Part shown: positions 6,352-59,865 of the stretch, in pieces | How positions within the stretch are numbered: position 1 is the stretch's first letter | Layout: each line of letters begins with the position of its first letter | Assembly (NCBI RefSeq): GCF_001194135.2 | Contig: NC_068999.1 | Span: forward strand, 30,363,369-30,427,368 | DNA length: 64,000 nucleotides | Source of the DNA: Octopus bimaculoides | Taxonomy: Eukaryota | Direction of reading: 5' to 3' | Made by a program: the position numbers and the translations under genes | The notes under the pieces: model-generated | Told to the model about the DNA's origin: nothing | The model's database searches: none | The model's input: the letters and a program-made list of their open reading frames with translations, nothing else

Positions 6352-6426
6352 CTTTATCCCAAACCAGAATTCTTGAAACTGCTTCAGTCTGTTGGTGCGA
6401 CAGGGAAAGCTTTTAGCATCTCTGAG
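6352..6426 (+). CDS. MDM2: MDM2 exon, SWIB-1 part a: LYPKPEFLKLLQSVGATGKAFSISE (75 nt, phase 0-0)
   Basis: ttttcag acceptor and GAG|gtaatt donor. Aligns ungapped with human [25 protein letters not shown]. Confidence 0.95.
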
Positions 6427-9400
6427 GTAATTCTTTATTTGGTACTTATAGTTTTAGAATCAGCCTTAAAATATGAGTGGTGGGTAATAGATTAAGTCAA
6501 CTGTTTATTTTGCATGTTTATACTGGCTGAGTCCTAGCAGTACCTACTTGTTAGGTCAATCCATCTTTTATTGTAATGTTTTGTGATATAACGACGGTTT
6601 CTTTATTACTTCAACCATTTCTTTCCTGAGCTTGCTCTGCAAAGAAGTGGCTAACCCAAGAGAGAAATTAATTTAAATCAGGCTTTAATTTACTACAAGT
6701 TCCAATATCTACCAGTAAACTGTTGAGAAAGTAGTTTGTAAGAGTATTATAGCAGCGGTAACAGATAGTAATTGCAGCTTTTTGTGATAATTCAGTTACC
6801 ATTTCTTTTGCTATTCGAATGAAACATTATTTGTTATATTATAGAATCATTATATTCTTCTCCCCTCTACAAATATATAAAAAAAACTCCATCAACATCA
6901 TCATTGTTTTTACATCCAGTTTATCATGCTTGCATAAGTCAGTGTTTATAGAGACAGATTTTCTATGGCCTGATGCCCTTCCTGTTACCAATCCTCACTT
7001 GTTTCCAAGCAAGGTAATATTTCCCCATGACCAGACATGTTTTGCTGTTTTTCTAGGAAAAAAAAAATGCTCCTGAAGTAACTCAGTTGGTGGTTGTATA
7101 CTCTAAGGATTCCAATGAATGTCAGATACAATAGATTGCCATGTGAGGATAAGTAGATTTTTAGTGTCTAGAGCTAATGTCAGATTTTTTTGTAGACTGC
7201 CTATTTCTGGTGGCTGATATTGAGTTAGTTAGCTATTTAAAACACTTTTATGCCAGAAAGACTTCATTTAAGAAGGTATGAAAGAAATTTTGGAAGCTGA
7301 GTGGATATATCTTGGCAAATTGAAAATAAGTCATGTCATCAAGTGACAAATGACAGTTAGTGGAGAAATGTGAAATCCAACAGCACTCTCTCTATACCTG
7401 TTACATGTACTCAATACACTGTATCAAGCTCCTGCTCATTCCCTTCTGACATATTGAGCAAAGTAACTCCTATGATTACTTATTCAGTTGACCTTTAGAT
7501 CTTTGGATTTTAGGCCATTTTACTTAATCTAAAAAATTTTCTGCAGCTCTTCAATAGATTCTGCTATATGACTTGGTTACAAAGGAGCCTAAGAGTTTTT
7601 AAGATTCCAGTCCAGAACTTTGGCTTTAATAGTTTCAAGAACTAAAATATTTGAATTACAATGTATTCGTAAAGGCTGTAATTCAAATTACTACATTACA
7701 GCAACATCAAAAGATGGTTCTGCAGAATCATGCTTTTGAGCCTTTCTGTACCTCACATAAAGCCATGACATTAACATTAGTATTGGCTGTAGAACCAGTT
7801 TTTGTAGTGTTATGTTTAGTAAGTGGAAATTTTTGAAACAGTAATTTGTCTTTCTGTTTTTCAGATCATTCGTTACTTGAAGAAATACATATCATCCCAC
7901 ATGTTGTATGATCCTCTCAAGCCCTGGTTGGTTCACTGCAGTAATGATAAATTGGGCAAAGTTTTTCGTCGCAATCATTTCACCGTTGTTGATGTCAGGT
8001 GAGACAGTTAACAAAGGCAACAAGCATTGTGCTGCCATCTTCATGCTGCACTGTGCCACTTCCCTTTATATTGTACTGTATCACCTTCTTTACATTATTA
8101 GATTCAATGCAGATGGAGAAGGAAAATTTCAAGCAGTGTAGTTATATAGTGGTCTGTATTAGAAAATGCACCATACCTTAAAATATATTTAAATGTCAAT
8201 GTAAAATGTATAAAATTATATATAAAACTAAGTAAGTACACAAACACATGCACGTGTATACAGGCTAAATAAAGTAGGATTACAACCAGGATAAAAGATG
8301 TGTGGCAGGTCATACATAAAATATTTGAATGGCTTCAAGAAGTAATGTGCTTGCCTACATCAATTTCATCATTGTATAAAGACAAGGAATTTGCTAGACT
8401 GAATCCTTTTCTTGAAGGACAGTCAACAGGTAACTATGTTTTTTCTCCACTCCACCTTTCAGATTTTGATCAAGTTGTTAATTAAATGTCATCATATTCT
8501 GTTCAATGCTACAGTTTAGATATCTCTTAATTAATTTATAAGATAATGAATCATTGTCATTTTTTTATATTTTGTGTATTGTGTACTGCTTTATTCAGTA
8601 CTGAGTATTTGTTGTGAAAAAATGTATAATGCTACATAAACGTTCTCTTTAAGTTACTTGTATATTTTTAAGCTTGCTCTTAATTATTACTCGTATATAA
8701 TTATACAGAGTTTTTCAAACTTAATTTCAACCTAGCTGGATCTCATTTGGCTTCAGTGCAATCAGAATCAGCCAAACTCACTGACATAAATTAAATGGTG
8801 TATGTATGTTGATGTGTGTTTACAAATGCATATTTGTGTGTGTGTATGTACAATATGTGTATTTGTATATATGTATACCATTATCATCATTTAATGTCCA
8901 TCTTCCCTACTGGCCTGGGTTGGGTAGTTTGAGAGTTGGAGGATAGCACTGAAGTCCAACATCTGCTTTTGCATGGTTTCTATTGACTGGATCTCCTCTC
9001 CAACGCCATCCCAGTCTACAGAGTATACTGGGTGCTTTTTCTTTTTTTTTTGAAGTTGCCAAGTAAATTATAAAACAAAATAGCCTCTCGACTGAGTGGG
9101 AGTAATAGTGTTCTTCTTTGCCTCCTTAATGATGGGATTTATTTGCAACAACCAGAGTAGCTTTTCCTGGACACTCATATTGATGCACTCATTGACATGT
9201 AGATATACTATTAATTTCTTGGCATTGATGACCTACAAGATCTTCAACATCTAACAGAGAGATCTCTTGAAACTAGTCAAATCTGGCTGAGTTTGCTTCT
9301 TTTGAGATAAAACAGTCCTTGGCAAGTTTCTAGAGCTTTTTCATGCTTTTTTGCTCCAGATCATTTGAAAATGTTTTACTAGCCTCTCCAGCAGCAGTGA

Positions 9401-12400
9401 GCATTTGCGCCAGATGGTCCTGGAGTAGATCCTGCTTGAGCTTTTGCTATTACTGCCCTTACTTTTTCAAGAGTGAAATTTTATGGAAAAGGACAATTCC
9501 CTCATGAAATATTTATTCTGAAGTTACTATGCACTGCTTCCTCGGAATATATCTACTGTCTACTTTTCGCCTTGCCAAAGAGGTCAGCTGTGAGCTGGAG
9601 TGGGTTGTTACAAAAAGCTCCCTCCCCCTCTCTTTCTCTCTCTCTCCTAGAGCATATCTACCAGAATTCTGAGCTCTGCTGGTTTAAGGCTGCTTTGCCC
9701 TGTACCATCTGTTTTCTTTCCTGTTTTCCTTAAGCTGTTTTTGCTCTTTCTCCAGTTTTGTGTTTTGAAGAAAGATAGAGAGAGAGAGAGAGAGCAGAAG
9801 AAGGTTTACTGAAGCCATGTCATTTATTGATATTTTTCTTTCTTTCAAACGAAAGGAGTGATTGATTGGCTTTTTTTTATGAAATGACTATTTCTTTAGA
9901 ATTGTGCTGTCAGAATAACCTTTAATCTTAAGCATGGCAGATTCTGTTCTTAAGCAGTTTAGTTTCCATGGTAGGGGAGATAGCTGTTCATTGCTAAGGT
10001 TATTTTTAAGCCTGTTGGAGTGTCATTGACTGATGCATTCTTATGTCTAATAATAAATGAATTCACTTTCAAAGATTTGTTGTGTGTTTCATGTTGACAA
10101 TTATATTTTGGGTTACGGGTAAAAATCTGGTTGATTAAATTTGTAATCCAGTTTTGATTCTTAGTTGTAGCATTTTTCAAATATTTTGTAATTCACATGA
10201 AGAGCCTGACTATGTAAGAAATCAATATTTTCTGATATTGTTTATTATTTGATTTCACTTTTAATTTCTTCTTTACTATTAAGTTATTGTAGAAATCTAA
10301 TTGTTGTTTTTTTTTAAAATTTTCGTTGTAGAGGTCTGCTTTACCAAAATGTTACATTTTCAAATAAATCAAACAGTTTTAACAGCAATGAGGTAAGACT
10401 TCGTATCATATATTTGACAATTTTATAATTGGTCTTAGATAATATTTATACTATAAGTCTTTTGTTATATTTAATAAAATTGGTAACTTTTGGGGTTGAT
10501 TTAGTCTTTGAATAGAAATGTTAATAATATAATTTTGGTGAGTGGGTGATACATTAACTGTCTGAGTTGATTAAGTTATCTGTAGTTGGTCACTTGGTCA
10601 GATAACATAATCCTGTTTGCTGGGTTGAAACACATCTTTCACTTCTATGATTACATTTATCTTTCGCTTGCATAATCACATTTAGAAGTTGATGATTCAT
10701 CATGAAAATATTATGAAGGTGAGTGGTGGTAGAGTGTAGTTGAAGTATGAGTGATTATAGGGTGTAGTTTGGGATGAGAGTGATGGGAGAGTGTAGTTGA
10801 ATGTGAATGATGGTGGTAGTATTATTGATTTGACTCAGACCAGCTCTAAGTAGGCCTATTATCAAAGGCCATAACCATCCTGTCTTTCTCCTATTTGGAA
10901 GGTATCTGGGACTACATTCAGTATGTCAATTTTTTAAAACCTAGGGTGTGATTCTTCTGCTATTATGAGGAGATTGAGCAACTCTATGTAGAAGTTCAGT
11001 CATTAAGTGTAGTGATAGTGTAGTGGCCACATGTAACGATCGCACTACATTGGTTGATCTGTTTTATTAACAGAAATTGCTGAAATTTAATTTCTATATA
11101 AGTTAATAGAATACTTAGTTGCATGATGGTGATGGTTTACTATTGTTGAGAAAGAGTAAGAATGAGAGAAGTAATATATACCAATTAATAGTGTAGAGTG
11201 GGCTACTGAGGATTGCATAAATATACATAAATATACAATCAGTATCTTTTAATGTCAATTTTATAAGCTGGGATGGGTTGGACAGCCCTGACACATTTGA
11301 GGACATAGATCATGTTCCAATGGTCTGCTTTGGTATGGTTTCTACAGCGAGATGCCCTTCCTACACCAATCACTTTACAAAGTGTACGAGTGCTTTTTCT
11401 GTGGCTCCAGCACAAGTAAGATCACCATGTAGCCGGCAAGATTAAGATCCCTTCAGCTAATTGGGACTACTGAGATGGAAGTTGCTTTACGCTAGGAGAT
11501 AAGAGGTTAAATAATGAGACAAATGACTGGAACAGAAGTTTTTTGTTGAGGAGCAACATGGCTACTCACATTATAGAAGACAGAGAGAGAGTAGGTGTAA
11601 CAAGGATGGAGTTGGAGAGATAAAATAGTGATGATGAAATGTCAGGTTAGTCCCTCAAGTTAGGAGGTGAGCAGAAGTGAATGGGGACAGAAGAAAATGG
11701 TGTGTTGGTGCATAGAGGGTGTGGATATAATTAATGAAAAACAAATGTAATGTGATAAATATACATTGAATGGAAGAGTAGTTGATAACTGTAGAGTTGA
11801 GTAGGGTTGATATAATGATTGCTGGATAAGGGGTAAGGGTGATCAGGGATACATGTGAGTTGGGGTGATAGGGTAGATTAGGAAATAACTGACAGTACTA
11901 AAAGAGGTGAAGAGCAGCAGACAGGTAGAGGATGAAAGACATGAGAGATATTTTGTTGGATGGGATGCAGGGAGTGGCAGGCATTATGCATGGGGAAGGT
12001 AATAAATGTAGGGTAGTGGTGGAGAGCTAATTTGCTGACATAGAAGGGTGATTTATGTAAAATGTCAGTGGAGAGGTACAGTACTAATAATATTATTATG
12101 GATATAAAATGAAATGGTCCTGAGTGTGAGAAAGATAAGTGGTATCAGGAAAAAATTGGTGAAATATACAATTTTGATTACAATATGGAGCAAATAATTC
12201 ATGAGAAAAAAATAATTCACGGAAAGATAATTTGTGAAGATACCATTGATTCTGTTATTATCTAGTGTAACAATTTAGAAATAACAACAGAATCAATAAT
12301 ATAGGTGATTGTAGGCATATAATTGTTAAAGAGGACAACAGATGTTAAGGTAAGGCAAGCATCTCAAGTCATATACATTATTATTATAGGAAAAAAAATT

Positions 12401-13116
12401 CAAAGTTTTACAGCTGTTTCTGGGATATCCCAGAGTATGGGATATTCCCTTATCGGAGACAAATAGGGAGAATGAGAACGTTCAGTAACAGAATAGTAGT
12501 GGAGGTAGCTATTAAGTGGTAAAAATAAATAAAAATAAATAAATAGAGAGGTAAAGAGAGTGTGGGAGGAAGTTAAGGATAAAGTAAGGTATATAAAAAT
12601 ATAGTGTCTAAGACTATAGTGTACAAAAATAGCCAAGAAAATAAGAGAGAAGAGGAGGAGATAAAGGTAGATGACGTAAAAAAATATAGGGTGGTGGAGG
12701 AGAGCTAATTTAGTGACATAGAAAGGTGATTAATGTAAAATGTCAGTGGAGAGGGACAGTATTAAGAACATTTCATGTCTCCTGTACTCTGTCAACATTT
12801 CATTAATTTATACCCTTCTCATTTTCTCTATTTATCGCTGATGATAGAATATCCCAGAAACAGCTGTAAGACTTTGAATTTTTTTTCCAATAATAATAAT
12901 GTATATGACTTGAGATGTTTGCCTTGCTTTAATGTTTGTTGTCCTCTTTAACAATTATATGTCTGCTATATTCAAAATCTGCAATGGCATGGCTCCATAA
13001 CTACTATCTTCACTATAACCTCGGAGCCCTAGTAATCTGTTACAGCACTTACCTAGCATACCTAGTCGTCTAAATCACCTGTGAACTAAATCCCCATATG
13101 TTGTATATTTTTGTAT

Positions 13117-13175
<59 letters not shown>

Positions 13176-16100
13176 TATGCATACACATACATGCACTGTT
13201 TACTATCATTAAGATGTCACCTTATTAACCTCATTAACTCTCTATCTCCTCTTCAGTCACCACTACCTTACTACGTATTACCATCAGAATTGTTTCTTCC
13301 AATCACCAATACTATATTATAGCATATTATTAATAGTAAGATTAGTATCCATTACAGCTAAGTTATAGTCTAAATTTAGTTCATTGGCTTTTCCTCCATG
13401 TTTTCAAACTTCATTTCCTTTCTCCAGGAGGACTCCTGTGACAGTGATGGTAAGTATAGATCTTCAGTTTCTTACATTGTTTCTATTGTCATATTAGCAC
13501 CTATCATGTATTACTGGATCACATGCAAAAAATCAACAACAAAAACATATTTACACAACAGAATTACAGTAATAGACAATATGTGAGGGTATCCAAAAGT
13601 AACTGGAAACATTCTCTGTGGGACAAGCCTGATGTAGTTCAGGCTTCCATCACTAGAAGCCACTTGATGCAACCCTCAGGCAACAGTCTGCTGACCAGCA
13701 GTGTCGGGTCAGGTCATACTGCCATGTGGTATGTCTTTGTTTTGCAGTGCTTCTTCCCTCTTTGTTGATTTTTGTGATCGCTGAAATGAAGAAATTCTGT
13801 TTTCTGTTGAGGAAAATGGTGGTTGAAACAGTTGTCATGCTTCAAACAGCTTAGAAGGATGCTGCCTTGAGCAAAACACAAGTTTATGAGTGGTTTTCAC
13901 ACTTTAGGAATGGTTACTTGTCATTTGAAAACCAATCTTGTTCAGATCAGCTGTCAACCTCCCAAATGAATGAAAACGTCTTGAAAATTCATGAACTCTT
14001 CTTGGAGGACTATCACTGAACAATTGACAAACTTGTTGATATGATTGGTGTGTCTTGAAGCTCCTACCAACGAATTTTGAGCAAGGAATTGCGAATGAAA
14101 AGAGTTGCAGCAAAATTCTTGCCTTGCTTGCTCACAGAAAATCAAAAGCAGTCATGACTGAAAGTGTGTCGTGAGCTGAAAGAACAGTTGGAAGATGATC
14201 CAGACCTTTTTTTGAAGGTCATCATTGGTGATGAGATCTAGTGCTATGGAATTTGCAGATGTGGAAGAGGTGAAGAAAAAAATGATGGCAGTGTTAAAAG
14301 GCATCACTTCGCAAGAGTTCCAACACTGCTTAAAACAGTGGAAAACTCATTTGGACTGATGCATTGTTTTAAATGGAGAATACTTTGAAGGCGATAAAAG
14401 TGTAAAATCCCGGTTTCGTTTGGGTACCCGCTCGTACAGCTATTGTTTATTTTTGGATACAATGCCTACCCATTAACATGGCATAGACATATTTTGTTGG
14501 AGCAGTTTTATTTTGTTTTTGTGTCACTAACTAATCAAACTTTAGTCTGTTCTCCTGTGACTGTGCCATATAATCCACTATCTCACGCACTCTACGACTA
14601 AATGTTTGTCTAGCAAGCTGTACTCCTGTATTAAGTATTTATGGCCAAATAGACTGTCTGTTATGGACATAAGGAAACTAGTGATCAGATACAAAGCTGG
14701 CTAATAACCATAACAACTTAATAAATTAATGGTGTACTTGTATCTTCCTAGCAAGTGGATAAACAGTTGAAAGTAGGTGAAGGAAATTTTACTAGTGACT
14801 TTGATTTTAATAAAGTAACAACTCTGAAGTTTGTGGTGCTCAGTTGATTTAGTCTGTTAGTAATGTTTCCTGTCTTGAAATATGTGGTTACATGTTCACA
14901 TCCATAAATTTTTATAACCAAACCTTTGTTTCTTAAACTGAAAAATAACAATTTACATGCAGTGTCTGTTGTTAACATAAAATGTTATCTTTCTAGTTGT
15001 CATAAACCAGTTCAAAGAAGGCTTTTATTCAAACTTTATTTCTTCTCGCTGTCTAATCTGTTAATCATGGCTGTCCAACAATTCAGATGCATTGTTTAAA
15101 GATAGTATGCATCTGTCAGTGTCATTTGACACTATGCTGCATTTTTGTACTCAATACAAAATAAGATATCTACATCTTTATCTATTATTTACTATTGTAG
15201 AAAGGAATTAATGATAGGATATTATAATTCATAACAGTTTTCCCTGCTAAGTGAAAAGTTAGTCACAGTGCATAAAAAGGGGTCTTGATAATTTGTCCTG
15301 ATCTCAGTTCTCTTGTCTCGTTTTGTCCTTGAATAGTTGGCATTTTGTTACCTGTAATACTCTTGTTCAGGTATTCTTTGCAAGTTTTGTTACCTGTATT
15401 GTTTATATTCAAGCACTCTTTGCCAGTTGCTAATCTGCTCGTTTTCAGGTACTGGTCTATGAGTTCTGTTTCTTTGTTGATACATTGCTTCTATTGGTGT
15501 ACTGTTGAGGTTGGTTCCTTGTTGATTTATTATTTGTGGATTTTGTTGTTCTGTATAGAACTCTGTTTATGTAGTTAGCCCTGGTTGTATTTGTATGTTA
15601 TCTTTGCTTCCTTGATTGAAAGATTGTCCTGCTAGAGTGAGATTGTGTATCGACACTATCTATTCATCTGTTTCTAAATTGTACATGTGCAAAGTGGGGA
15701 GAAATTGTTTCCAACAATTTAACGTTTTCTACAGGTGGATCCCCCATATTTCTGAGATGTTGACAATGCAATATTGCGCTTCCGATATTCTGGAGGAATT
15801 CAGGTTGAATGGTTCCCAATGTCGATCATCTTGAAAATTTAAACACTTGCTTATGAGTCGTTGTATTGGTAGCTGTACAGAGGAGTCTTCTCATGGCTGA
15901 TAGTGCCATGGAAAGGTCTGTCAACCATTGTCTTTTATCTAGTTGTAGTGAACTAAGTGCTAGATTTATGGTCTTTATGAGGGTATTGTTAGTCCTTTCA
16001 CATTGGCCGTTGCCTTGAGGTTAATAGGGAGATGTTCTTGTTTTTATTGTTCAGTTAGCGTGAAAGAAGTCCTGGAGCTTCAAACAATGAAAAGAGGTTG

Positions 16101-19100
16101 AACAGGTGGGAAATTACTGTTTTGGTACTCATGTTTTTGCATGGGTATGTGAAAGGATACCTTGAGTACTCATCAACTATTACCAATAAGTAGCGGTATT
16201 GTGTGGACAGTGGCAGGAGACCAACAGAGTCAATGGAGAGGCACTCCCAAGGTCTCGATGCCTGTTTTAATTGGCCCATAAGTGGTTTGTGGAAGCAGGG
16301 TTTGAGTTTGTTGCATGTAAAGCAAGCGAGTGCCATTTTGCAGATTTCATTGAGGGAGAACTGCAGGTTTCGTACTTTACAGTAGTGAAGTAGGCAGGCC
16401 ACTCCTGGGTGGCACAGTTTTTGTGAAGGGTTATTAGTGTTGTAGTGTCTCTTGTTGCTGCACATCTTGATAGTGTACCTGCTGTTTTGTTTTGAGTTCC
16501 TGGTCTATAAGAGATAGTGTAATTTATGTCTAAGAGGTCCAAGCGCCAGTGTATAAGTTTTTCATTTTCGATGCCCCTTGCTTATTGAAGATCATCACCA
16601 CTGAGCATTGATCAGTGACAATGTTGCAATATGGGGAAATATGTATTAGGTGGTGCCATTTGCGGCAACATTCTACGATTGTGCAGGTGTCTCTCTTGAT
16701 GATGGGTTAGTGTTTTTCTGTTTTTGAAAAGGACCTTGAATAGAAGGCCACTGGCCTTCCTTGTGATAACGTCCTTTCCAAGGCTAGGTCGGAAACATCT
16801 GTTTTGATGGTGAGTGGTAAGGGTAGACATCCAGTTGTGTGTAGATATTTATCGTGTTAGAGTAGTCGGTCACCAGTCTATTTTTCTTTCCATTAGATGT
16901 CACGAAGCATTGAACTCGCCAAGGACTACGGCTTTCCTGAATTATTCCCTCTGAAAGTAACCTGTCAATTTTGTGTTTAATAAACTCTGCATCTCTGGAC
17001 TGTCTTGAAGTTGTAATTGGTTTGAGCTTAGAGGTCTTAATGCCAGGAAGTAGTTTGTATGTGGTGCATTTTAGGCTTGACATGGACATGCAGAATGACA
17101 GGTTTGAGCATGTCCTTGAAGTCAATTGTAACTACCGAGTGTTGACTGAAGATATCGATTCCGATGATGACCGGAGCTACAAGGTGGTCAGCCACAAGGA
17201 AATTAGCATTATATGCGTAATTTCCCAGTTGTAGTTTGCTTTTGATTTCTAGTGTTGTGTTGTTGGCCAAGTTAACTTTTTCTGGGCAGGTATGATCATA
17301 TTGTAATCCCCCGACTGCAAGAAGATTCACTTTTATAAATGTTCTGTCAGAACCCGTGTCAAGAAGAGCTTGTGTATTGTTGTCCTTAATTTTAACGGGT
17401 ACCAGCCGTCCTGTACCTAAAATGAGGGATGATAATGTCCCATCACTGTTTTCCTCTGAGTTGCCCTCAGGCTCTGTGATAGCTGCTGTTTTAGGGGAGT
17501 TTCGTTTGTTTCATTGTGGCTTTTTTGAGAGGCACACTTTCTCCAAGTGGCCTTTCTTCTGACACCTTTTGCAAGTGGAGTTTCGCCGGGCATTGATTTT
17601 CTTTTTTTTTTTTTATGGATGTCTCCACTGCACCAAAAGCATGCTGATTTAGCAGTTGCAAGACGGAGTAGTTGATTGATACCAGCTGAGCCTTGCAATA
17701 GTTTGGGAGTTCTTCAATGGCCACCTCCATGGTTTGAGTAAGCTTATAGAGTGTTTCTAAGCCGTTGTCTGATGACTCAAGAAGTCTTTGTCTGATTGAT
17801 GGTGACTGAAGCCCAGCCACAAAGGCATCACCAATTAGAATTTCTCAGTAATGGCCTGCTGTTAGGGCTTGGATTTTACTTTTCTTGGCCAGTACCTGAA
17901 GGCTTGACATAAATTCTTTTATAGACTTGTTTTCCTTTTGTTTTTGAGTTCGTAGCTTTCTTTATGAACTTTGAGTCCAGGCATTCTATTGCTGCCTCGA
18001 AGGTTTCGGATTTTTTGACGATGGGGACGGTCCTTGCTCCATAGAGGACTAAAAGTACTTCCAGTTTAGATTCCTCTGGAACTTTTGCTTTTGCTATGCG
18101 GATGTGTAGCATCTGTTTCCAGTAAATATAATCTTCCTCAGTTGGATCGTCTGGTAGGGTCCTCTCGAACATTTTGGCATCCATTCAGAATGAAGTTTGA
18201 ATAAAATTTGTCATAAACCAGTTCAAAGAAGGCTTTTATTCAAACTTTATTTCTGCTCGCCATCTAATCCGTTAATCATGGCTGTCCAACAATTAAGACC
18301 TGTTGTTTTATATTAAGTAAAGACAGTGTCCATCTATCAATGTCATTCGACACTATGCCACATTTTTGTACTCAATATAAAATAAGATATCTATATTTTT
18401 ATCTATTATTTACTATTGTAGAAAGGAATTAATGGTAGGATATTATAATTCATAATACTAGTGTCGACAGAATTCTTGTCACTACCTGTTCATTGACCCA
18501 CTGCTGGTGACTTCACATGTCCAAACCCATTGTTTTCTTATTGATTGAAAATCTAGCAAGGTCAGTTGTTATTGGCTTTGTATCACTCACTTTCTTTCTC
18601 TCTCTCACTCTCTCTCTCTCTCACACACACACACGTACACATACACATTATTTGAATGTGGATATAAACTGTTTTGTTTGTGTCATTTTGTAGTCTAAAG
18701 CACAGTTTTCTCACTGATTCCTAGCCTAGGTAGAATGCATAACTGTCATCTTTCTTACCATTCTTTTTCTCTGTTATATAAGACAGTAAACCCTCTGTCT
18801 ACATGAGTGGAATATATTTGGTCTATAAGTTTTATATCTTTACTATTTCAGCCACGGAAGTCCTTGATTCTAGTAAATCTGACTCAGAGCACACATCATC
18901 ACAAATGGTAAATATTATGACTAGTTTTTATACAGTCAGTGTATATATTTTGTTGTTGTTTAGCACTCCAAGCTCAACCCTGATGTTGCACATTTGGGAT
19001 TAAAGCCATTCCAACATTCACCATTCTCTCTAGATTAATGTTGTCTACATCCTTTTTTTAAAACATTAAGACATGATATGAAGTAGATGTGTCTGCTATA

Positions 19101-19619
19101 TCTAGCAGGTTGAGTAATCACATAGTTGCTTGAGAATGCGTATATGTGTATGCTTTAGAAATTTATGTTACTGTAAAATCTCTATTATTTCGTATAGGAA
19201 AATTGATGATGGAGATGATTTCTGATTTAGTTACAAGACTGCAATTTTGAGTGGTGGGTGGCTAGTTATTACCTTTGATCTTAGTACCTGAGAAGTACTT
19301 TGTTGACCCTGAAAGAATGAAAGGCAAAAGTTAACCCCAGCAGGTCAACGTTACCTTTCATTTTTTTGATATTGATAAAATTAAGTACCAGTCAAATAAT
19401 AATAATGGTTTCAAATTTTGGCCCAAGGCCAGCAGTTTTTATGGGGAGGTGGAAGTCAATCACATTGCTTTTAGTACTTAACTGGGACTTATTTTGTTGA
19501 CCCCTGAAAGGATGAAAGGCAAAGTTGACTTCAGCAGAATTTGAGTTCAATGTAGTTACAGACAAAATACTGCTAAGCATTTTGTACAGTGTGCTAAAGG
19601 TTCTACCAGCTCACTGCCT

Positions 19620-19650
<31 letters not shown>

Positions 19651-22600
19651 ACATCAATATTATCTGTTATTTTGTATAGGACAAAAAGGGTGGTGGTGGT
19701 GGTGGTTTTGAAAAGCTTAGGCTCAAATGTGGACATTGTCGATCTCACTAAAATCTTACCCAAAATGCCAGATGATGGTACTGAACTGAGCAGCAGATTA
19801 AGTTTGCTTCCCTAGTAGCTCATAGCAGGATTAGGATTTAGCTTGAATAAATGCTGCAATATATTTCACCTGATGCTGCAATGACTTTACAGATTAGATG
19901 CCTATAACAACAAATTAAGAATGTATATTCTAAATTTTTTCTCATCTGTGCAACATGTTTGTCCAAGTTAAAACACATTGGTTATTGCTCTAGATGTAAA
20001 TATATCTTTTATTACCATCTTACTTCATCACATCTCTGTCCTCACTACACATACTAACTCTCAATCTTGGTTTTCACTTAAGAAACAAAAATAAAAATTT
20101 TCAGTGCATGAATAGACAACACAACCCTGTTCTTATGTTACCTAACATGGTACAGCAAGTTCTTTTGATCATTAATATCATTCAGAATATAGTCAATTCT
20201 CAGTAAAAATAGCTTCATTGATGTATCTACTCTTAATGATATAATAATCAATTTCTGATTCATTCTTGTAATCCCTTTCTGCCTCCGTCTTTTGTTCCTC
20301 AGAACAAGGTAGTTGCACAGTGCTTCCTGCCAAACCATACCACTTGCCTTTCATTTGCTACTTCATTCACCTTACAAACTGTACTAAACATTACATGCAG
20401 TCCTTCATTTCACTTATTACAGTAATTGCTTATTGACCTCTACTTTCATGGTTTATGGCAATTGTCCTTCTATGGACATACTTTCTTTTTTTGACTTCTG
20501 TACCCTACCTTTTATTGCTATATCTCTTTGTTAACCCTTGACTGCTGATTTTTTAGACCTTTGATGACCTTTCTTGGCTACTGGCCACTTTATAACCTTC
20601 CTAGGGTTATTAATTTATCCAGCACCCACCCAACACCTCCAGTTTTCTTTTTCTATATCTGAATATCTTATATCTGTTTGATCATCTTTTCAGCTTTTAC
20701 CACATGGTGTTATCTTAAGTACTCATGATACCTGATGTTATCATGTGTTTATTATCTTATCATCTCAGATTTATGTCTGATCATCTTTCATCATCTTCCT
20801 CATATGTTACTGCATGATGTTATCCTATGTTATCTCATCTTATCTGATCATCTTCTCAGATGTTACCACGTGATGATGTTATCACAAGTTCAACATCAGA
20901 ACCAGTCAATCTTAGCCAAAACTCTTCACCATTGGTAAGTTAGCTTGTCCTCCTTATCTGTTTTTTTATTTTTATTATCACTGTTGTACATAATGTTTGT
21001 TGTTAGAGAGTATAGGTTTACAATATGGAACCACAGTTGTTATATTTCAGATGGTTGACATGTGTGTGTATTTACATTGATAGTAGGCACAAGTGTATGA
21101 GTGTGGTTAAAAAGCTTGCTTCCCAACCATGTCATCTTGGGTTCAGTTCTACTACACAGCACCTTGTGTTAGTTTCTTCTATTACAACCCTGGGCTGGCT
21201 AAAGACTTGTCAGTAGATTTGGTAGACAGAAGTCTATTGTGTGTATGTGTACCCTTCTCTTGACTTCAAGAGATGGTTGTAAATAAACATCACTGTCATA
21301 GTTGTTGTGTTGTTCATTTTCAGTCTTCTGTGAAAACATGTCTAGTTAAGGAAAAAGCCTGCCTCAGCAAAATCCATCTACCCCATGCAAGCATGGAAAA
21401 GTAGTTACTAATGATGAAGAAATATGTATGATTGTGTGTGAGCATGCGCATGCATACATACATACACACATGCATGCATCATCTGCTCCTTGTGTGTCAA
21501 ATGTGACACAGGAGCTCACCCATTCTCTTCTTATTGCCTCCTGCTCTTTCATGGATTTTTATTCATGTTTTCAAACACTCTACCTCACCATCAAACTTCA
21601 AAATAAAAAACTAAATTCAAAATAAGTTGAAAGCAATTTGGCTACTCATTCTCCAGAGTCGCACTATCCCCAGCAATCTATGTCTCATAGATGCTGGATG
21701 AGCTTTCTTAGCAGGGGCCTAAATCCAGATTCCCTGATTGAGGATGACTTCAACCTCAAAAAAGCTTAATTCTAACTGGACATCAAATTTGGGCCTACAT
21801 CACTCTGTCAATTTATTTGTTCATAGATGCTATTTTAATTTATGTGTCTTCAATTTCAAGAAACAACTACCAAGATGGACAGTTGTAAATGGTGAGACAT
21901 CATTATCAAATCATCTGACAAAGGTGGAACTATTGTAGTGGTGAATGAACAACATTGCATCTATAACTTGTAGAAGTAAGAGGCATTTTGCCAACTCAAT
22001 GACTCTCTAATGATTGTGCCAGCAACTACCAGAGACAAGTGTCCTCCACTGTGCCTGAACTTACCTCTTCTGGATCTCTTCCACCTTCTGCCACTAACCT
22101 CATTATAACCACACCCTGAATCTCTACCATCTACTTTGTCTGCAAAATCCACAAAACAGACAATCCTGACCACCATGTTGTCTCCATATGTAACTACCTA
22201 CTGAACTTCTCTCATTGTTCCATCACAAAATATCACCTCTTGTTACTGTTTTACTCTTACACATTAAAGACACTAGCCATGCCCTAAACTTCTTCAGCTC
22301 ATTCTCTTTTCTGCCTAGACAGTCTAAACTCCTTTTCCTCGTAGACATTTATTCACTCTATGCTGTCATTCTTCACAAGTCTATCAGCTCTTGAACTCTT
22401 TCTAGTCCTGTTCTCAGCGCTACAACAATCTTCTGTTTAACTGAGCTTGTCCTAACCTTTAATTGCTTATCTTTCTCTGGTGAATTTTACAAACAAGTCA
22501 CTGGGGTTGCTTTGGGAACTAGGATGCAAACCTCTTTGTAAGCTACACTGAAGAGCGAATGTTGACAGAATCATTTCAATTTTGGAAAAAGAAATATGAT

Positions 22601-25600
22601 TCATAATCACATATGTGGTTTTTATGTTTGCTGTTTATTTTCTTAGATTTTTCTGTGTGTTCTTTGGAAAATACCTTGAATCCAATTTTTCTGCTGGGCA
22701 ACATGAAACTGGTGTCTATAATTTATCCAAACTGAAACATTTTAGAAAACCGAAGTGGTAAAAAATGTGAAAAAATCTCCAAAAATTCTCAGCTCTCAGA
22801 TATCATGTAAAATAACATCAGACAGTATAATTCAATTGTTTACATTGTGAAATCACTTGCTTTCATGAATGTACTGAAGAGATTTGTGCTGAAATTCCCA
22901 TTTAAATATGACCAGCTTATTTCAGCTGTTTTCAGGCAGGTTGGTAACATAAGCCAGGAAAATTCTCAGGCGTCTATGGCTGGGCTGGTAATGAGAAAAT
23001 TAAGAGCAACAGCACCTCCTTTGTAAGCTACTATAAGTTTATCTCTTTCTATATAACATTTATCTCACATTATTCTTGGGAGTGCTGGTTTCAATGTCTG
23101 TTTTCAGGTGTATTACTTCCTTTATCACCAATACCTACAAAAACAGTTTGAATGACACACTCTCAGTCTTCATTTTTATAAAACTGTGGCCTTGTAATAG
23201 TTTACAACTAATAATTTCTTTATTTTATTTGGTATTTCAGTACAGTGTGAAACCATCTTTTCTGGAGATTCTCCATGTTGCTGGTGCCAAGGGGTATATG
23301 TTTACAGAAAAAGAGGTATGTTATTTTGTGACATAAATGCTAGCTGTATAGACGAAGAAGATAGAGATTATTGGACACTGTGTTACTAAGAGTAAGATAA
23401 TACAGATTATGTTGATATGATTTATATCCAGTAGTAATTGATGAATTCTTTCTCTAATGCAAGTTGTCTCTATTAAATGCTGTCTCTTTCTAGCATAGTA
23501 CAAGTTATAGAACAGATATATTCCTGAAATGCTGTCGAATTATGTTACAGTTACCTTCCTGTAATATAACACTATACCTTTCTAACACATACCAGTTTTG
23601 GTACTAAGACATTACCCTTTTCATTAGTAGGCTGTCACCTTATTGATTTAGTCAGCCATCACCCTTTTTGATTAACTATTTACAAGTGTCATTTCATGAT
23701 TTACAAAGATATTTTACTATCAAAATGACAATTACTTAAAGTTGTATGTACTAACACAACTGTTGGCTAAAAGGAATATAGATGAACAATAATGTTTAAA
23801 ACAGAATGAAGTATTAAAATTTGAGTCTATTTGAGCCTGAATTTTTGTTGTGCTAAGGTGATAAGTTCCTACTGTCTTTTGTATGTTTTTATTTCTTCCT
23901 TTTGTATTTTAACTTGTATGTTCCCAAGTGAATCACATTGTTTGGTTTATGTTGCAGATCTTTAGATATTTAAAACATTATATTTGGTCTCGGAAATTGT
24001 TTGATCCAGAACAACCTTGGATTTTCCTATGTCACAACGACAGATTAGCAGATGTATTTAAATTAGAAAAATTTATAATTTATGATGTTCCGTAAGTATC
24101 TTGTGACTAATTTAAAATTAACTGTAAAAATTTTAATATAAATAATATTCAAGCCTATTTTCCTGTCTCCTACTCCATCTGTTACCATAGCGTAGCAATC
24201 TTTACATCTGCTAGAACTAATACAAAGTAGCGATCCTTAGTTGAATACTGACCAGTGAGATTGTCTTTTCACTTCAAAATAATTAAAAGGTTTATTTTTA
24301 CTATGTTTCAAAGTGATCTTTTTAGCTTTTTTTTTTTTAAGTGCTTGAAGCTTTCTTGCCTTGTCTGTAAGGTTTTAGTTTCAGGTAAAGAATCATTAGA
24401 ACCCTCTCCCACATAATTCTGAAACTTCTCTCAGAGGTGAGCAGCAAGTAACAAAAGAGAAAAAAAATTGTCTTGATGTAAATCTTTTTCTACTGTGTAT
24501 GTTAATAATGGTATAATCTAATTTAAAATTTCTTTTATATTCCTCAGATCTCTTATTGCCAGATATGGAATAGAAAGCCCAGAATATCATCCAAAACTCA
24601 CAAAAAGACTGAACAGTGAAGAAGTAAGATTTATATTGCTGTTATTATAATTCTTCGCTATTTCCAGAACACAAGCTTGTTTATAGATTCTTTGTACAGT
24701 AGTTGAAACCTCTTACATGCAATGCATCTATTCTGGCTTAACTACTTTGTTTTTACCTCACATAAATTTAGCTAAAGGACTGCTTAGAGAGGAATTAACT
24801 GATGGCATTGCCAATTCAAATACCAAGTCTTTGATTACAGGACAGTGATGATAATAATATCAGTAATAGTGATTATTTTAGACACTTTGAGGTAGAGATA
24901 ATTTAACATTAATTGAATGTAGGAAAGATTTGATAAGATTTTATAAAGATCAATGTTATTGTAATACCCCGTCATCATTTTACACTTTTTGATATATTAT
25001 TGTAATATTCTGTCATCACTAGTCACTGTCAATATTTGAAAATATTACTCCTGCCAAATTTCTGTAATAATTGCAGTGACATTTCAGTTTGTCAAGTTGA
25101 ATACCATAATAACTGTATGTTGTGATATGTTAAGAACCATTTCACACTGTAGTATGTTAATAACTGTATTGTATTGATATATGTTAATAACTATGTCAAG
25201 TTGAGATATGTTAACTGTTATGTAACATGTTATTATGTTACATTATGATATATTAATAATTGTGTCATGTTATGATATTTAATCATATCTTCTTGTGATT
25301 TCAAATTTTGGCACAAGGCCAGCAAGTTCAGGGGAAGGTTAAGTTGATTACATCGACTCCAGTGCTCAACTGGTACTTATCAATCCTGAAGGGATGAAAG
25401 TAAAGTGATCCTTGGCAGAATTTGAACTCAGCCTGTTTTAATAATCACATCACATTGTGGTTGGCGTTAGGAAGGGCATCCAGATTGGAGCCTAGTGTAG
25501 CCATCCGGTTGCACCAGTCCTCAGTCAAATCGTCCAACCCAAGCTAGCATGGAAAGCGGACGTTAAACGATGATGATGATTGTGATGTTTATAATTGTCA

Positions 25601-27564
25601 CATTGTGAATGTTAATAACTGTGCTTTGTTGAAATATGTTAATAAACCTGTCATCTGTTATAACTTTGGTTTCTTTCTTTACAATTCAATAGCTAAAAGA
25701 AATGTTAGATACAAATAGCCGTCTGACTTCTCATTCTTCTGCTCCTGGCCAAATGCAATCTACACCTTCGGACATTACCAGTAGCACCTCGGAGACCACT
25801 ACCACACAAACAAGTTCTTCATTATTAGGTTTGTAGCTCAATTCCAAACCATCATCTCTCTACTTTTCATTGAACAAAGTTCACAATCTTCAATGTTCAT
25901 CTTAAAAATAAGTAAATATACTGGGTAAGTTAGTTTTGAATATAAAAAGAGAACAGGATGGTCATAGCTGGATTGTCAGTCAAGTGCCACACAACTGATC
26001 AAAGAAACATGTAGACGAAATTTAAAACCACCAATTCTGTATGAAGTAAACAAGTACAGATTCATAGTTACAGTTATACTGTAACTTTACATACTTCTGA
26101 TATGATCAATATGTGGTCTGTATGCTTGAACACTCCACAAAGTCTTTTGGTACACACTAATACATTGAACAAAAAAAGCAATAAGACATATCTAGACTGC
26201 AACACTGCATGCTGGATCATGCAGTGTGGTGCTTATCTAGTTGCTGGTATGATACATCTGAAACGATAAATATATGGCATATATCTGCTTGACTGTGGAG
26301 TGTTTTTAGTGATTTGGTGTTTATCTATATGACATACACTACATGTTTTATCAGAGCTGATTTGTTGGTTATACTACAGTAATTATAATAACCACCAACA
26401 CTACCTGTTATAGCTATTAGCACTACTATAACCACTAACACTAACTATAATGATGACCAAAACTAACTACTTTAGCTACTACCAATTATTACTATAGCCA
26501 ATACTAATACTAACTGCTACAACCATCTAACCATCGGGAGAGCCTATGAGTGAACCATTACACAGGTGTTTGATCTGGTAGAAATAACAGCCAAATCTTA
26601 AGTAATTCTTGAGACTTGTAATGGAACAAGATGGTCACATTTGAAAAGTTTTTGGTCATAGGTATACCCCATCATAGTTAGCCTATATGTGACTGAACAT
26701 TAACTTGCAATAAAACAACATAATTTTGGTTTTTGGATAATTTTTATTGTATTTCAGTTTTTCTGTAACTGATTTAGTTTTTCATATAAACCTGGGTTTG
26801 CATATAACAGCTAGCTCACATATTTAATAAACCAATTAACTTACTAATTAGGAAACATTAAAAACAAAACAAAACAAAAGGCAAACAATTTTTTAAATAT
26901 TTTGTTGAGTAACCAATGATAAAATAGTTTTGAGTACAAAGTTGAGTAGATGATGTTTGTGTATGAAGGCACAGTTAATGGTTCATTGTGTCTATGGAGA
27001 CACAGTAGATGGGGTATGACATGCTGGATAAATGGCTTCTCCATGGTTCTCTCATCTTCACTAACAGCCCTCTGCTGCATAATCATCTTTAAAAGTTGTA
27101 CATTTTATATTTTTCTTACCTTCCAAGTAAAAGTTTCCATATATATTGTTTTTTTTTTATCTCTCTTCAGAAGAGTCATTGAGGGCTTCAACCAGCTGTT
27201 CCCCATCAACTAGCTTTACATTGACTCTGGAAATGAATAATGAAAATGAAGTATTGAGTATTGAAGTAGGAAGAATTTCATTCTTTTAAAATTGCTTTTC
27301 ACATTGTTTTTTTCATTCAGAAATGGTACCATTGCAAGTATAATGAAATGTTCTCCATGATATAGTTCAAACATACTGAAAAGTTCTTCATTGAAGAATG
27401 GCAGAGTCCCAAATATAAGGAGGACAGTAGTAATGTTAACTTCCTAGTTATGAATGGCTATTTTTGTTAACAAGGATTTTGTGCATGTGTACAGAGAGAG
27501 AGAGAGAGAGAGAAAGAAGTGTAGGTATATGTATATAGAATACAAATGTAGATATGTGTGTGAC

Positions 27565-43389: not shown

Positions 43390-43806
43390 TGGTACTGTAG
43401 AAGTGAGATATTAGGGGTGGGGTACTTTACAGATATTAGTGTTTGGGTACTGTACAGCTGAGATAGTGGTATTGGGGTACTGTACAAGAGAGATGTTGGG
43501 GTTGGGATATTGTACAGGTGAAATGTTGAGGTACAGTACAGATGAGATGAGATGTTGCTGTTGGAGTACTATACAGGTGAGATATTGGACTTGGGGTACA
43601 GTACAGGTGAGATGTTGGTGTTTGGGTACTGGACAGGTGAGATGTTGATGTCTGGGTTGGTGAAATATTGATGTTGGAGTACTGTACAGGTGAGGTATTA
43701 GTAAAGTGGTATTGTTGTATAGGTGAGACTGTGGTATTGTTGTATAGGCGGTTAGTGGTGTACAGGTGACATATTGGTAAGGTGGTGGTATTCAGATGAG
43801 ATATTG
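43390..43806. repeat. Degenerate minisatellite, unit about 30 bp (ggtactgtacaggtgagatgttggtgttg), roughly 13-14 copies
   Basis: Recurring gtactgtacaggtgagat motif visible throughout. Confidence 0.85.
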
Positions 43807-52250: not shown

Positions 52251-52299
52251 TTGTTGCATAGCTTGTCTAATTATACCTGTTCCTGTTGTTAATGTTGGT

Positions 52300-59860: not shown

Positions 59861-59865
<5 letters not shown>

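What the first reader, a model, noticed from the sequence alone, without database searches (positions are those of the whole stretch)
6352..24623. MDM2 with two tandem p53-binding (SWIB) domains created by exon-block duplication
Seen in sequence: two exon triplets (6352/7865/10332 and 23241/23958/24548) each encode a complete SWIB/MDM2 domain. Their first two exons are identical in size (75 and 134 nt) and all phases match. They are 32/69 identical in the aligned part, and both carry the derived motifs RYLK and DPxxPW. Three linker exons (22, 56 and 75 nt) join them in one open frame to the acidic, zinc-finger and RING exons. Established: vertebrate MDM2 and MDM4 have one p53-binding domain. 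Inference: a bivalent MDM2 could bind two transactivation domains of a p53/p63 tetramer with avidity, or bind two different partners. I do not know of a published description, but I cannot search. The introns of the two blocks show no visible similarity, so the duplication looks old and retained by selection.
Basis: partly seen in the sequence, partly recalled or inferred. Interest (0 to 1): 0.92.

Follow-up and report, generated by a model that had tools for sequence, protein, structure and literature searches.

The report
Octopus MDM2 with duplicated p53-binding domain
The octopus version of MDM2, the enzyme that keeps the tumour suppressor p53 in check, really does carry two p53-binding domains in one expressed protein; a cuttlefish has the same layout but other molluscs have one domain, and I found no paper describing it.

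Summary
Confirmed. The window is Octopus bimaculoides. Two exon triplets (6352/7865/10332 and 23241/23958/24548) each encode an MDM2-type SWIB domain above Pfam's threshold. The domains are 47% identical to each other.

RNA-seq reads and assembled RNA contigs show GT..AG junctions joining most of the 14 exons, from SWIB-1 to the stop codon. One 2,322-nt RNA contig runs from the last SWIB-1 exon through the linker, SWIB-2, the acidic region and the zinc-finger/RING exon into the 3' UTR. Independent DNA contigs cover both blocks at single-copy depth, so this is neither an assembly artefact nor two separate genes.

The cuttlefish Acanthosepion pharaonis protein named MDM2 (CAE1323096.1) has the same two-domain layout. 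SWIB-1 groups with SWIB-1 and SWIB-2 with SWIB-2 (99% and 100% bootstrap), so the duplication predates the octopus/cuttlefish split. Both copies stay 64-69% conserved. A chiton, four bivalves, a gastropod and a priapulid have one SWIB.

The duplicated unit is probably about 141 residues (SWIB plus its downstream linker), so the "linker exons" are likely part of it.

Binding of two p53/p63 activation domains at once is plausible, because mussel MDM2 binds weakly (KD 15 uM), but it is untested. I found no published description. This is a new variant of a known kind. Interest 0.6.

The parts
6352..6426 (+). SWIB-1 exon a (75 nt, phase 0), LYPKPEFLKLLQSVGATGKAFSISE. The upstream coding exon, ending ...SSTEKPNSTK, lies outside the window.
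   Evidence: AG/GT borders. RNA reads cover exactly 6352-6426, then continue into exon 7865. The loose end before 6352 was not found in the window.
7865..7998 (+). SWIB-1 exon b (134 nt), the core of the cleft: IIRYLKKYISSHMLYDPLKPWLVHCSNDKLGKVFRRNHFTVVDV.
   Evidence: Joint 7998>10332 is seen in reads and contigs. Joint 6426>7865 is seen as a loose end and a mismatch pattern.
10332..10392 (+). SWIB-1 exon c (61 nt, phase 2), the C-terminal helix: (R)GLLYQNVTFSNKSNSFNSNE.
   Evidence: Joints 7998>10332 and 10392>13428.
13428..13449 (+). Linker micro-exon (22 nt), EDSCDSD.
   Evidence: Joints 10392>13428 and 13449>18852, with 12-13 reads in X21, 10-11 in X22, and contigs in X9 and X14.
18852..18907 (+). 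Linker exon (56 nt), ATEVLDSSKSDSEHTSSQM. Conserved in Sepia as DSDATEILVSSMSDSDHE.
20860..20934 (+). Linker exon (75 nt) carrying the motif DDVITSSTSE, the first of two copies. Probably the end of duplicated unit A.
   Evidence: Joint 20934>23241 is also seen in a sister species.
23241..23315 (+). SWIB-2 exon a (75 nt, phase 0), YSVKPSFLEILHVAGAKGYMFTEKE.
23958..24091 (+). SWIB-2 exon b (134 nt), IFRYLKHYIWSRKLFDPEQPWIFLCHNDRLADVFKLEKFIIYDV.
   Evidence: Joints 23315>23958 and 24091>24548.
24548..24623 (+). SWIB-2 exon c (76 nt, phase 2), (P)SLIARYGIESPEYHPKLTKRLNSEE.
25693..25828 (+). Ser/Thr-rich exon (136 nt) with the second copy of the motif, SDITSSTSE. Probably the end of duplicated unit B.
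   Evidence: tblastn of P0001. Borders. The motif and its spacing. Its inclusion fits the length of the 2,322-nt RNA contig; this last point is inference.
27171..27265 (+). Exon (95 nt), EESLRASTSCSPSTSFTLTLEMNNENEVLSIE.
   Evidence: Its 3' end is seen as the loose end in front of 34596.
34596..34700 (+). Acidic-domain exon (105 nt), SEDPVEDVYVEYEVMSNTSSVQISDSEDDQPQVAM.
   Evidence: Joint 34700>37835 in reads and contigs.
37835..37927 (+). Second acidic exon (93 nt), DMLVICQDSDMEFWADLSENGSDSDVELSEA.
   Evidence: Joints 34700>37835 and 37927>41864.
41864..42436 (+). Last coding exon. It holds a RanBP2-type C4 zinc finger (WCCSKCHAFNSPIHRLCDICW), a basic/Ser-rich stretch, the C2H2C4 RING (CLIC...CPIC), the tail ...VVRNYLT and the stop codon.
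   Evidence: ORF. (Pfam zf-C3HC4_3, 40.5 bits against a cut-off of 27). (RNA contig from 41864 onward).
42437..43321 (+). 3' UTR. RNA contigs end at 43254 (X9) and 43321 (X14), and coverage falls to zero after about 43375.
   Evidence: depth table and contig pieces.

Best explanation
**What it is**
This is the single MDM2-family gene of Octopus bimaculoides. It is a RING E3 ubiquitin ligase with the usual layout of p53-binding SWIB domain, acidic region, RanBP2-type zinc finger and C-terminal RING. The difference is that a block of about 141 residues at the N-terminus has been tandemly duplicated inside the gene. That block holds the SWIB domain and the Ser/Asp-rich segment after it.

**Shown**
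- Both copies are spliced in series into one mRNA and read in one frame.
- The duplication predates the octopus/cuttlefish split.
- Both copies have stayed under purifying selection since.

**Inferred**
- Like other MDM2s, the protein probably binds the FxxxWxxL helix of the p53/p63/p73-family transactivation domain in the hydrophobic cleft of a SWIB domain and ubiquitinates the target through its RING (about 0.8).
- With two clefts on a flexible acidic linker of about 60 residues, one molecule could hold two transactivation domains of a tetrameric p53-family protein. Two weak, micromolar molluscan-type contacts would then add up to a tighter, more switch-like hold. I put the chance that both clefts bind the same kind of motif at about 0.4-0.45.
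For: **Exons and frame.** There are 14 exons with AG/GT borders and one open frame of 569 codons to a stop.

**Domains.** Pfam finds SWIB twice and a RING. The best solved-structure matches are MDM2 and MDM4.

**RNA.**
- GT..AG joints are seen in raw reads of two or three runs and in contigs of two more: 7998>10332, 10392>13428, 13449>18852, 18907>20860, 20934>23241, 23315>23958, 24091>24548, then 34700>37835 and 37927>41864.
- Joint 6426>7865 is seen as a loose end.
- Read counts per joint are similar, 9-14 in run X21, which suggests constitutive inclusion of every exon.
- One X9 contig of 2,322 nt (depth 72.6) carries most of the joints from 10392 to the 3' UTR; 24623>25693, 25828>27171 and 27265>34596 were not seen as joints and rest on the contig's length, the P0001 model and a loose end at 34596.
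- The same joints appear in a sister Octopus species.

**Genome.** Independent DNA contigs cover the locus at single-copy depth with 0-2 differences, and broken only at repeats. Two other species carry both blocks at about 97% identity.

**Conservation.**
- Acanthosepion pharaonis MDM2 (CAE1323096.1) has SWIB-1, linker, SWIB-2, acidic region and zinc finger.
- In a neighbour-joining tree of SWIB domains, SWIB-1 pairs with SWIB-1 at 99% bootstrap and SWIB-2 with SWIB-2 at 100%.
- Octopus-versus-Sepia identity is 69% for SWIB-1 and 64% for SWIB-2, against 67% for the acidic region.
- Synonymous sites between the two blocks are saturated.

**Cleft.** Both domains keep the hydrophobic cleft positions L57, I61, F86, F91, V/I93 and L99.

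**Avidity rationale.** Mussel MDM2 binds its own p53 activation domain with KD 15 uM (PMC10303687).
Against: - No binding, ubiquitination or structural data exist. The single-sequence AlphaFold model of the SWIB-2 protein was unusable (pLDDT 38.6).
- SWIB-2 has bulky substitutions at cleft positions: L54F, M62W and V75F (Cys at position 75 in Sepia). Both domains have H73W. These could narrow or refill the cleft, so SWIB-2 may not bind a p53-type helix.
- I did not examine the octopus p53-family protein. That cephalopod p53 homologues have a transactivation domain rests on PMC5543598, which reports it for squids only.
- The first coding exon lies outside the window, so the N-terminus is incomplete.
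- The full chain rests on three overlapping short-read contigs, not on one long read.
- Monophyly of the four cephalopod domains has only 36% bootstrap.
Confidence: 0.6

Rival explanations
1. Division of labour after the duplication. SWIB-1 is the more conservative copy and keeps p53-family binding. SWIB-2 has acquired another ligand, or acts within the molecule, for example by docking an aromatic motif of its own acidic region (such as DSDMEFWADL) as an autoinhibitory lid, in the way the WW element works in vertebrate MDM4.
For: SWIB-2 has the more divergent cleft: F at position 54, W at 62, F or C at 75 and E at 50, changes shared by octopus and cuttlefish and not seen in the other molluscs examined (F54 also occurs in Priapulus). 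SWIB-2 is slightly less conserved than SWIB-1 (64% against 69%). SWIB-1 scores better against human MDM2 (E 5e-15 against 8e-10). The MDM4 autoinhibition analogy comes from my own knowledge and was not tested here.
Against: SWIB-2 keeps most of the hydrophobic cleft core and is still recognisably an MDM2/MDM4-type domain (E 4e-11 to MDM4). No alternative ligand is known. Aromatic residues at positions 54 and 62 do not by themselves abolish binding.
Confidence: 0.33
2. The two blocks are alternative cassettes, used in different isoforms or from an internal promoter, so most protein molecules carry only one SWIB.
For: The 2015 UniProt model A0A0L8HLB2 starts in the intron at 17082-17186 and contains only SWIB-2. 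Vertebrate MDM2 is known, from my own knowledge, to have isoforms that skip the p53-binding exons.
Against: The 16697-17337 bin, which holds that model's first exon, has almost no RNA coverage. All serial joints have similar read support. No skipping joint appears among the best-supported joints. One RNA contig joins the last SWIB-1 exon to SWIB-2 and the RING. Minor isoforms cannot be excluded.
Confidence: 0.05
3. Artefact: a mis-assembly, or two neighbouring paralogous genes wrongly read as one.
For: None beyond the a-priori possibility. The window has two N gaps, but both lie outside the tandem region.
Against: Independent DNA contigs cover both blocks at single-copy depth in three species. 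The blocks are only 52% identical at the nucleotide level. Spliced RNA joins them. A cuttlefish has the same order of domains.
Confidence: 0.01

Closest known systems
Vertebrate MDM2 / MDM4 (human MDM2, e.g. PDB 1YCR; MDM4, e.g. 3DAB)
   Same: The order of domains is the same: SWIB, acidic region, RanBP2-type zinc finger, C-terminal RING with an aromatic residue near the end. The SWIB exons of 75 and 134 nt match my recollection of human MDM2 exons 4 and 5 (not checked here). The PDB sequence matches are E 5e-15 and 4e-11.
   Different: Vertebrates have two genes with one SWIB each, which pair through their RINGs. The octopus has two SWIBs in one polypeptide. Cleft residues differ: K for G58, W for H73, and a helix shorter by three residues after position 99, the last as in all protostomes examined.
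Single-SWIB molluscan MDM2 (Mytilus trossulus, studied biochemically in PMC10303687; Liolophura XP_064614524, Saccostrea XP_061193642, Gigantopelta XP_041352129)
   Same: These are the closest relatives outside cephalopods, at 42-58% identity in the SWIB domain. They share K58, P72, V96 and L99, the acidic motifs (EYEV, DSD.EF[WF]AD), the zinc finger and the RING.
   Different: They have one SWIB, Arg where both cephalopod domains have Trp (DPxxPR against DPxxPW; Ser in Saccostrea), and an N-terminal motif EEEYTVxVPLVRPKP (most clearly in Liolophura, Potamilus and unnamed relatives) that cephalopods lack.
Acanthosepion (Sepia) pharaonis 'MDM2' gene model CAE1323096.1 / A0A812ELE9
   Same: It has the same tandem SWIB-1, linker, SWIB-2, acidic region and zinc finger, with orthology domain by domain.
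   Different: It carries a species-specific repeat expansion (SEESVPAATL) before the acidic region. The deposited model loses the RING and ends in a low-complexity read-through.
Unnamed metagenomic MDM2-like proteins with two SWIB-like domains plus a RING (P0100, P0103 and relatives)
   Same: They have two SWIB-like domains in tandem followed by an MDM2-type C-terminal RING. P0103 also has an acidic stretch and a C4 zinc finger.
   Different: Their domains are very divergent from the cephalopod ones, and the first domain lacks the first helix. A relative, P0171, lies on gene-dense contigs that look like a large DNA virus. This is an independent origin, not an orthologue.
Plant and fungal proteins with two SWIB domains
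   Same: They show that SWIB domains can occur in tandem in one polypeptide (PMC4758235 was found by the phrase 'two SWIB domains'; I did not read it, and the rest is my own knowledge).
   Different: These are chromatin or nucleoid SWIB proteins with no acidic region, zinc finger or RING and no link to p53.

Membership tests
MDM2/MDM4 family (p53-regulating RING E3 ligases) | N-terminal SWIB/MDM2-type p53-binding domain | tested here: met
   Pfam PF02201 is found twice, at 31.0 and 28.9 bits separately and 52.1 bits combined, against a cut-off of 25. The best solved-structure matches are MDM2 and MDM4 N-terminal domains.
MDM2/MDM4 family (p53-regulating RING E3 ligases) | Central acidic domain | tested here: met
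   Exons 34596-34700 and 37835-37927 encode the Asp/Glu/Ser-rich stretch SEDPVEDVYVEYEV...DSDMEFWADLSENGSDSDVELSEA. It is 67% identical to Sepia, and similar acidic motifs (SVEYEVESD, DSDVEFWAD) are visible in the chiton and bivalve MDM2 sequences.
MDM2/MDM4 family (p53-regulating RING E3 ligases) | RanBP2-type C4 zinc finger between the acidic domain and the RING | tested here: inconclusive
   The motif W-C-C-x2-C-x10-C-x2-C-W is visible and 85% identical to Sepia. Pfam Zn_ribbon_RanBP was not reported for the octopus protein at E<=0.01 and scored only 17.4 bits, below the 27-bit cut-off, in Sepia.
MDM2/MDM4 family (p53-regulating RING E3 ligases) | C-terminal C2H2C4 RING at the very end of the protein | tested here: met
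   Pfam zf-C3HC4_3 scores 40.5 bits against a cut-off of 27, at residues 515-563 of 569. All eight Zn ligands can be seen in CLIC...H...H..CC..C...CPIC.
MDM2/MDM4 family (p53-regulating RING E3 ligases) | Closest relatives in a whole-library search are MDM2 proteins | tested here: met
   HMMER over 1.84 billion representatives gave top hits that, where named, are called MDM2 or Mdm2-like (two are deposited as 'hypothetical protein'). They come from a cuttlefish, a chiton, bivalves, a gastropod and a priapulid.
MDM2/MDM4 family (p53-regulating RING E3 ligases) | Binds the p53-family transactivation helix and ubiquitinates p53-family proteins | not testable with these tools
   This needs biochemistry. 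Only conservation of cleft residues could be inspected.
Canonical MDM2 architecture (one p53-binding domain per polypeptide) | Exactly one SWIB domain | tested here: not met
   There are two SWIB domains in one spliced open frame. The same holds in Sepia. This is the feature that makes it a variant.

The most novel reading that the evidence does not exclude
At least octopuses and cuttlefish, and so probably coleoid cephalopods generally, share an MDM2 in which both p53-binding domains work. One ligase molecule would then clamp two transactivation domains of a p53/p63 tetramer. This would be an avidity route to tight p53 control, in contrast to the vertebrate route of raising single-site affinity and duplicating the whole gene into MDM2 and MDM4.
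Probability: 0.4. Interest if true: 0.75.

Novelty: new variant of a known kind. Interest (0 to 1): 0.6.

Why it matters
- **Architecture was thought fixed.** The papers I consulted treat the MDM2 layout (one p53-binding domain, acidic region, zinc finger, RING) as standard wherever the p53-binding domain is retained. PMC5543598 found no MDM gene in the two squid species it names as lacking one. Here a major animal group has kept an internal duplication of the p53-binding module since before octopuses and cuttlefish split.
- **A natural experiment on motif evolution.** It bears on how a weak, motif-mediated interaction can be strengthened. Molluscan SWIB/p53 affinity is micromolar (PMC10303687). 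Two sites in one chain facing a tetrameric target is a textbook avidity design.
- **Easy to test.** The mechanism can be tested with peptides and recombinant domains.
- **Annotation.** The UniProt entry A0A0L8HLB2 for this gene is a truncated model.

Tried and rejected
- **Word-indexed protein search.** With the tandem region as query it returned only the truncated UniProt model P0001. It did not return the Sepia protein even when given part of that protein's own sequence, so it was of little use for comparison.
- **Structure prediction.** AlphaFold2 on P0001 without an alignment gave pLDDT 38.6. I rejected the model and did not run a fold search. SWIB-1 could not be submitted at all.
- As a result, joints 24623>25693 and 25828>27171 were not seen directly. 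They rest on the P0001 model, on the loose end at 34596 and on the length of the 2,322-nt contig.
- **First coding exon.** The RNA-derived 30-mer TCATCAACGGAAAAACCAAACTCAACCAAA is not in the window.
- **Bootstrap.** The Biopython bootstrap timed out and I replaced it with my own neighbour-joining bootstrap.
- **dN/dS.** Between the two blocks dS is saturated. Between species I had no cuttlefish coding DNA.
- **One review not held.** PMC4221809 (The MDM2 gene family) is not in the library.
- **Explanations rejected.** Assembly artefact, separate paralog, and mutually exclusive cassettes; see the rival explanations.

Full report
**1. The observation**

Each has an AG acceptor and a GT donor and the stated size.
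- Block 1: 6352-6426 (75 nt), 7865-7998 (134 nt), 10332-10392 (61 nt).
- Linker: 13428-13449 (22 nt), 18852-18907 (56 nt), 20860-20934 (75 nt).
- Block 2: 23241-23315 (75 nt), 23958-24091 (134 nt), 24548-24623 (76 nt).

Joined, these give 708 nt of open frame. Both blocks use phases 0, 0 and 2.

Each block alone passes Pfam's SWIB/MDM2 model: 31.0 and 28.9 bits against a cut-off of 25. Against the sequences of solved structures, block 1 is closest to human MDM2 (E 5e-15) and block 2 to human MDM4 (E 4e-11). The two blocks are 33/70 identical (E 2e-23). This is far beyond chance.

**2. The organism and the whole gene**

A UniRef protein of Octopus bimaculoides (A0A0L8HLB2, 265 aa) is 100% identical to the second half of the region. 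So the window is from that octopus. That old model starts in an intron (17082-17186) and lacks SWIB-1.

Following the frame downstream gives five further exons: 25693-25828, 27171-27265, 34596-34700, 37835-37927 and 41864-42436. The result is 14 exons and 569 codons ending in a stop. The product has two SWIB domains, a Ser/Thr-rich stretch, an acidic region, a C4 zinc finger (WCCSKC...CDICW) and a terminal C2H2C4 RING (Pfam zf-C3HC4_3, 40.5 bits).

The first coding exon lies upstream of the window. RNA reads continue 5' of 6352 with ...SSTEKPNSTK, a sequence not found in the window.

**3. Is it one transcript?**

- Raw Illumina RNA-seq reads of the same species (X21, X22) and assembled RNA contigs (X9, X14) show GT..AG joints at 7998>10332, 10392>13428, 13449>18852, 18907>20860, 20934>23241, 23315>23958 and 24091>24548.
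- They also show 34700>37835 and 37927>41864.
- Joint 6426>7865 appears as reads that leave exon 6352-6426 and continue with the sequence of exon 7865.
- Read counts per joint in X21 are 9-14, so none of the exons looks optional.
- In X9, one contig of 2,322 nt (depth 72.6) maps at its 3' end to 41864-43254 and carries most of the joints back to 10392. Three joints in that span (24623>25693, 25828>27171, 27265>34596) were not observed as joints; they rest on the contig's length, the P0001 model and a loose end at 34596. Its first 931 nt equal, to the base, the summed lengths of the exons from 10332 to 37927 plus three bases. This last point is my own arithmetic.
- A sister Octopus species shows the same 20934>23241 and 23315>23958 joints.
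- The bin holding the intronic "first exon" of the UniProt model (16697-17337) has almost no RNA coverage.

**4. Is it an assembly artefact?**

No.
- Contigs of an independent run of the same species, with intron coverage at a uniform low depth of about 8-12 as expected of genomic DNA, cover 5878-25000 with 0-2 differences and break only at repeats.
- Two other Octopus species carry both blocks at about 97% identity.
- The blocks share no detectable nucleotide similarity.
- They are 52% identical over 219 aligned coding bases. Third positions are 33% identical, which means synonymous sites are saturated.

**5. Age and selection**

A HMMER scan of 1.84 billion representative proteins gave 113 hits.
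- The best foreign hit (E 8e-69) is the protein deposited as MDM2 of the cuttlefish Acanthosepion (Sepia) pharaonis, CAE1323096.1.
- It has the same order: SWIB-1, acidic/Ser linker, SWIB-2, Ser/Thr-rich stretch, acidic region, zinc finger. Pfam finds two SWIB stretches in it.
- In a neighbour-joining tree of 42 SWIB domains, octopus SWIB-1 pairs with cuttlefish SWIB-1 in 99% of 300 bootstraps. SWIB-2 pairs with SWIB-2 in 100%. The duplication therefore predates the split of octopuses and cuttlefish. From my own knowledge that split is on the order of 250-300 million years old.
- Between the two species, SWIB-1 is 69% identical and SWIB-2 64%. That is similar to the acidic region (67%) and higher than the linker (48%). 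A copy drifting neutrally for that long would not be recognisable.

MDM2 proteins of a chiton, four bivalves, a gastropod and a priapulid have one SWIB.

The four cephalopod domains form one group in the tree, but with only 36% support. A shared Trp supports a duplication on the cephalopod lineage: DPxxPW in both domains of both species, where most other protostomes examined have DPxxPR. Whether Nautilus has the duplication could not be checked.

**6. What was duplicated**

I think they belong to the duplicated unit.
- A motif D[VI]ITSSTSE lies 120 residues after the start of SWIB-1 (residue 121, exon 20860) and 120 residues after the start of SWIB-2 (residue 262, exon 25693).
- A similar motif, SP[VI]I[ST]SST, follows the single SWIB in several other molluscan or unnamed MDM2 homologues.
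- The segments ATEVLDSS...QMM...DDVITSSTSE and LKEMLDTN...QMQ...SDITSSTSE align in the same order.
- Statistical support is weak: local score 54 against 39 +/- 6.5 for shuffles, with 28 of 1,000 shuffles as high.

The unit would then be about 141 residues. It is split 75/134/61+22/56+75 nt in copy A and 75/134/76/136 nt in copy B. That implies two introns gained or lost after the duplication.

**7. Mechanism**

Shown: one mRNA, two intact MDM2-type domains, an intact RING with all eight zinc ligands, and long-term conservation.

Inferred from the family: the protein is the E3 ligase for the p53/p63/p73-type protein of cephalopods. PMC5543598 reports that squid p53 homologues keep the transactivation domain, and found no MDM gene in the two squid species it names.

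The cleft positions known from the human complex (Kussie 1996, as used in PMC10303687) compare as follows:
- Both domains keep hydrophobic residues at L57, I61, F86, F91, V/I93 and L99.
- Both have K58, as all protostomes examined do.
- Both have W73, where most other protostomes examined have Arg.
- SWIB-1 has I54, S62 and V75.
- SWIB-2 has F54, W62 and F75 (Cys at position 75 in Sepia).

The mussel SWIB binds its own p53 motif with KD 15 uM, against about 0.1 uM in human and chicken (PMC10303687). Two such weak sites on one flexible chain, facing a tetramer with four activation domains, would gain from avidity. That is my preferred mechanism, at about 0.4-0.45.

The main rival, at about 0.33, is that the bulkier cleft of SWIB-2 has shifted to another ligand or to an intramolecular role.

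**8. Comparison with what is known**

It meets the family features that could be tested. The RanBP2 finger is visible by eye and conserved, but falls below Pfam's cut-off. It departs from the family in one defining point, the number of p53-binding domains.

Full-text searches found no description of an MDM2 with two SWIB domains and none of a cephalopod MDM2. The architecture is, however, already present without comment in at least one deposited gene model (Sepia). I did not check RefSeq octopus models.

The library covers open-access papers and bioRxiv only. "Not described" is therefore provisional.

**9. Verdict**

The functional idea is reasonable but untested. I rate it a new variant of a known kind, with interest 0.6. 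It is still a good and readily testable lead for the p53/MDM2 evolution field.

Noticed in passing
Outside the window: proteins P0100, P0103, P0154-P0161, P0171; loci L001-L003: A family of unnamed metagenome proteins has one or two SWIB/MDM2-like domains, sometimes an acidic stretch and a C4 zinc finger, and an MDM2-type C-terminal RING (42 hits to P0103). One member, P0171, sits on 28-44 kb contigs that are gene-dense on both strands and carry PIF1 helicase, Pox_A22 resolvase, SprT-like, DUF5850 and DUF5832 genes. That looks like a large DNA virus rather than an animal genome. MDM2-like ligases may therefore be virus-encoded.
   Followed up: partly
window 17082-17186: The UniProt/2015 gene model A0A0L8HLB2 begins with an ATG exon inside the intron between exons 13428 and 18852. 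That exon's bin has almost no RNA coverage, and the model misses SWIB-1 and everything after 27265. It is a truncated, mis-started annotation.
   Followed up: yes
window 29446-31212, 32830-33225, 52087-53544, 27994-28829, 13855-14016: There are transposon remnants in the MDM2 introns and downstream. Reverse-transcriptase fragments score RVT_1 E 6e-12, and a PIF1-like helicase fragment, as in Helitrons, scores E 5e-26. There are weak transposase-type helix-turn-helix matches (HTH_38; HTH_48 of Mos1), both below Pfam's cut-offs.
   Followed up: partly
window 12851-13491, 17979-19901, 21184-21824, 38621-39254, 41157-41473: Intronic stretches show RNA and DNA depth hundreds to thousands of times above the exons, with many chimeric joints and loose ends. 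These are dispersed repeats and microsatellites (TA/CA/CT runs) whose reads come from copies elsewhere in the genome, not from MDM2 expression.
   Followed up: partly
window 29312-29411 and 56919-57132: Two assembly gaps (runs of N, 100 and 214 bases). The first lies in the 7.3-kb intron between exons 27171-27265 and 34596-34700. Neither touches a coding exon.
   Followed up: yes
window 42109: G/A variant in the last coding exon. It is seen in 22 of 37 reads of X21 and in the X9 contig. It is synonymous (CTG to CTA, Leu) and is most likely a polymorphism.
   Followed up: yes
window 13428-13449, 18852-18907 (linker): The inter-domain linker is not free-drifting. DSDATE[VI]L.SS.SDS[ED]H and DD[VI]I[TS]SSTSE are conserved between octopus and cuttlefish. 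Their Ser/Asp pattern looks like acidic-kinase (CK2-type) phosphorylation sites; that reading is inference only.
   Followed up: no
window 44000-64000: No RNA coverage was seen just after the MDM2 3' UTR (43376-44000). I did not examine the remaining 20 kb beyond an ORF listing, which showed low-complexity and reverse-transcriptase-like ORFs.
   Followed up: no
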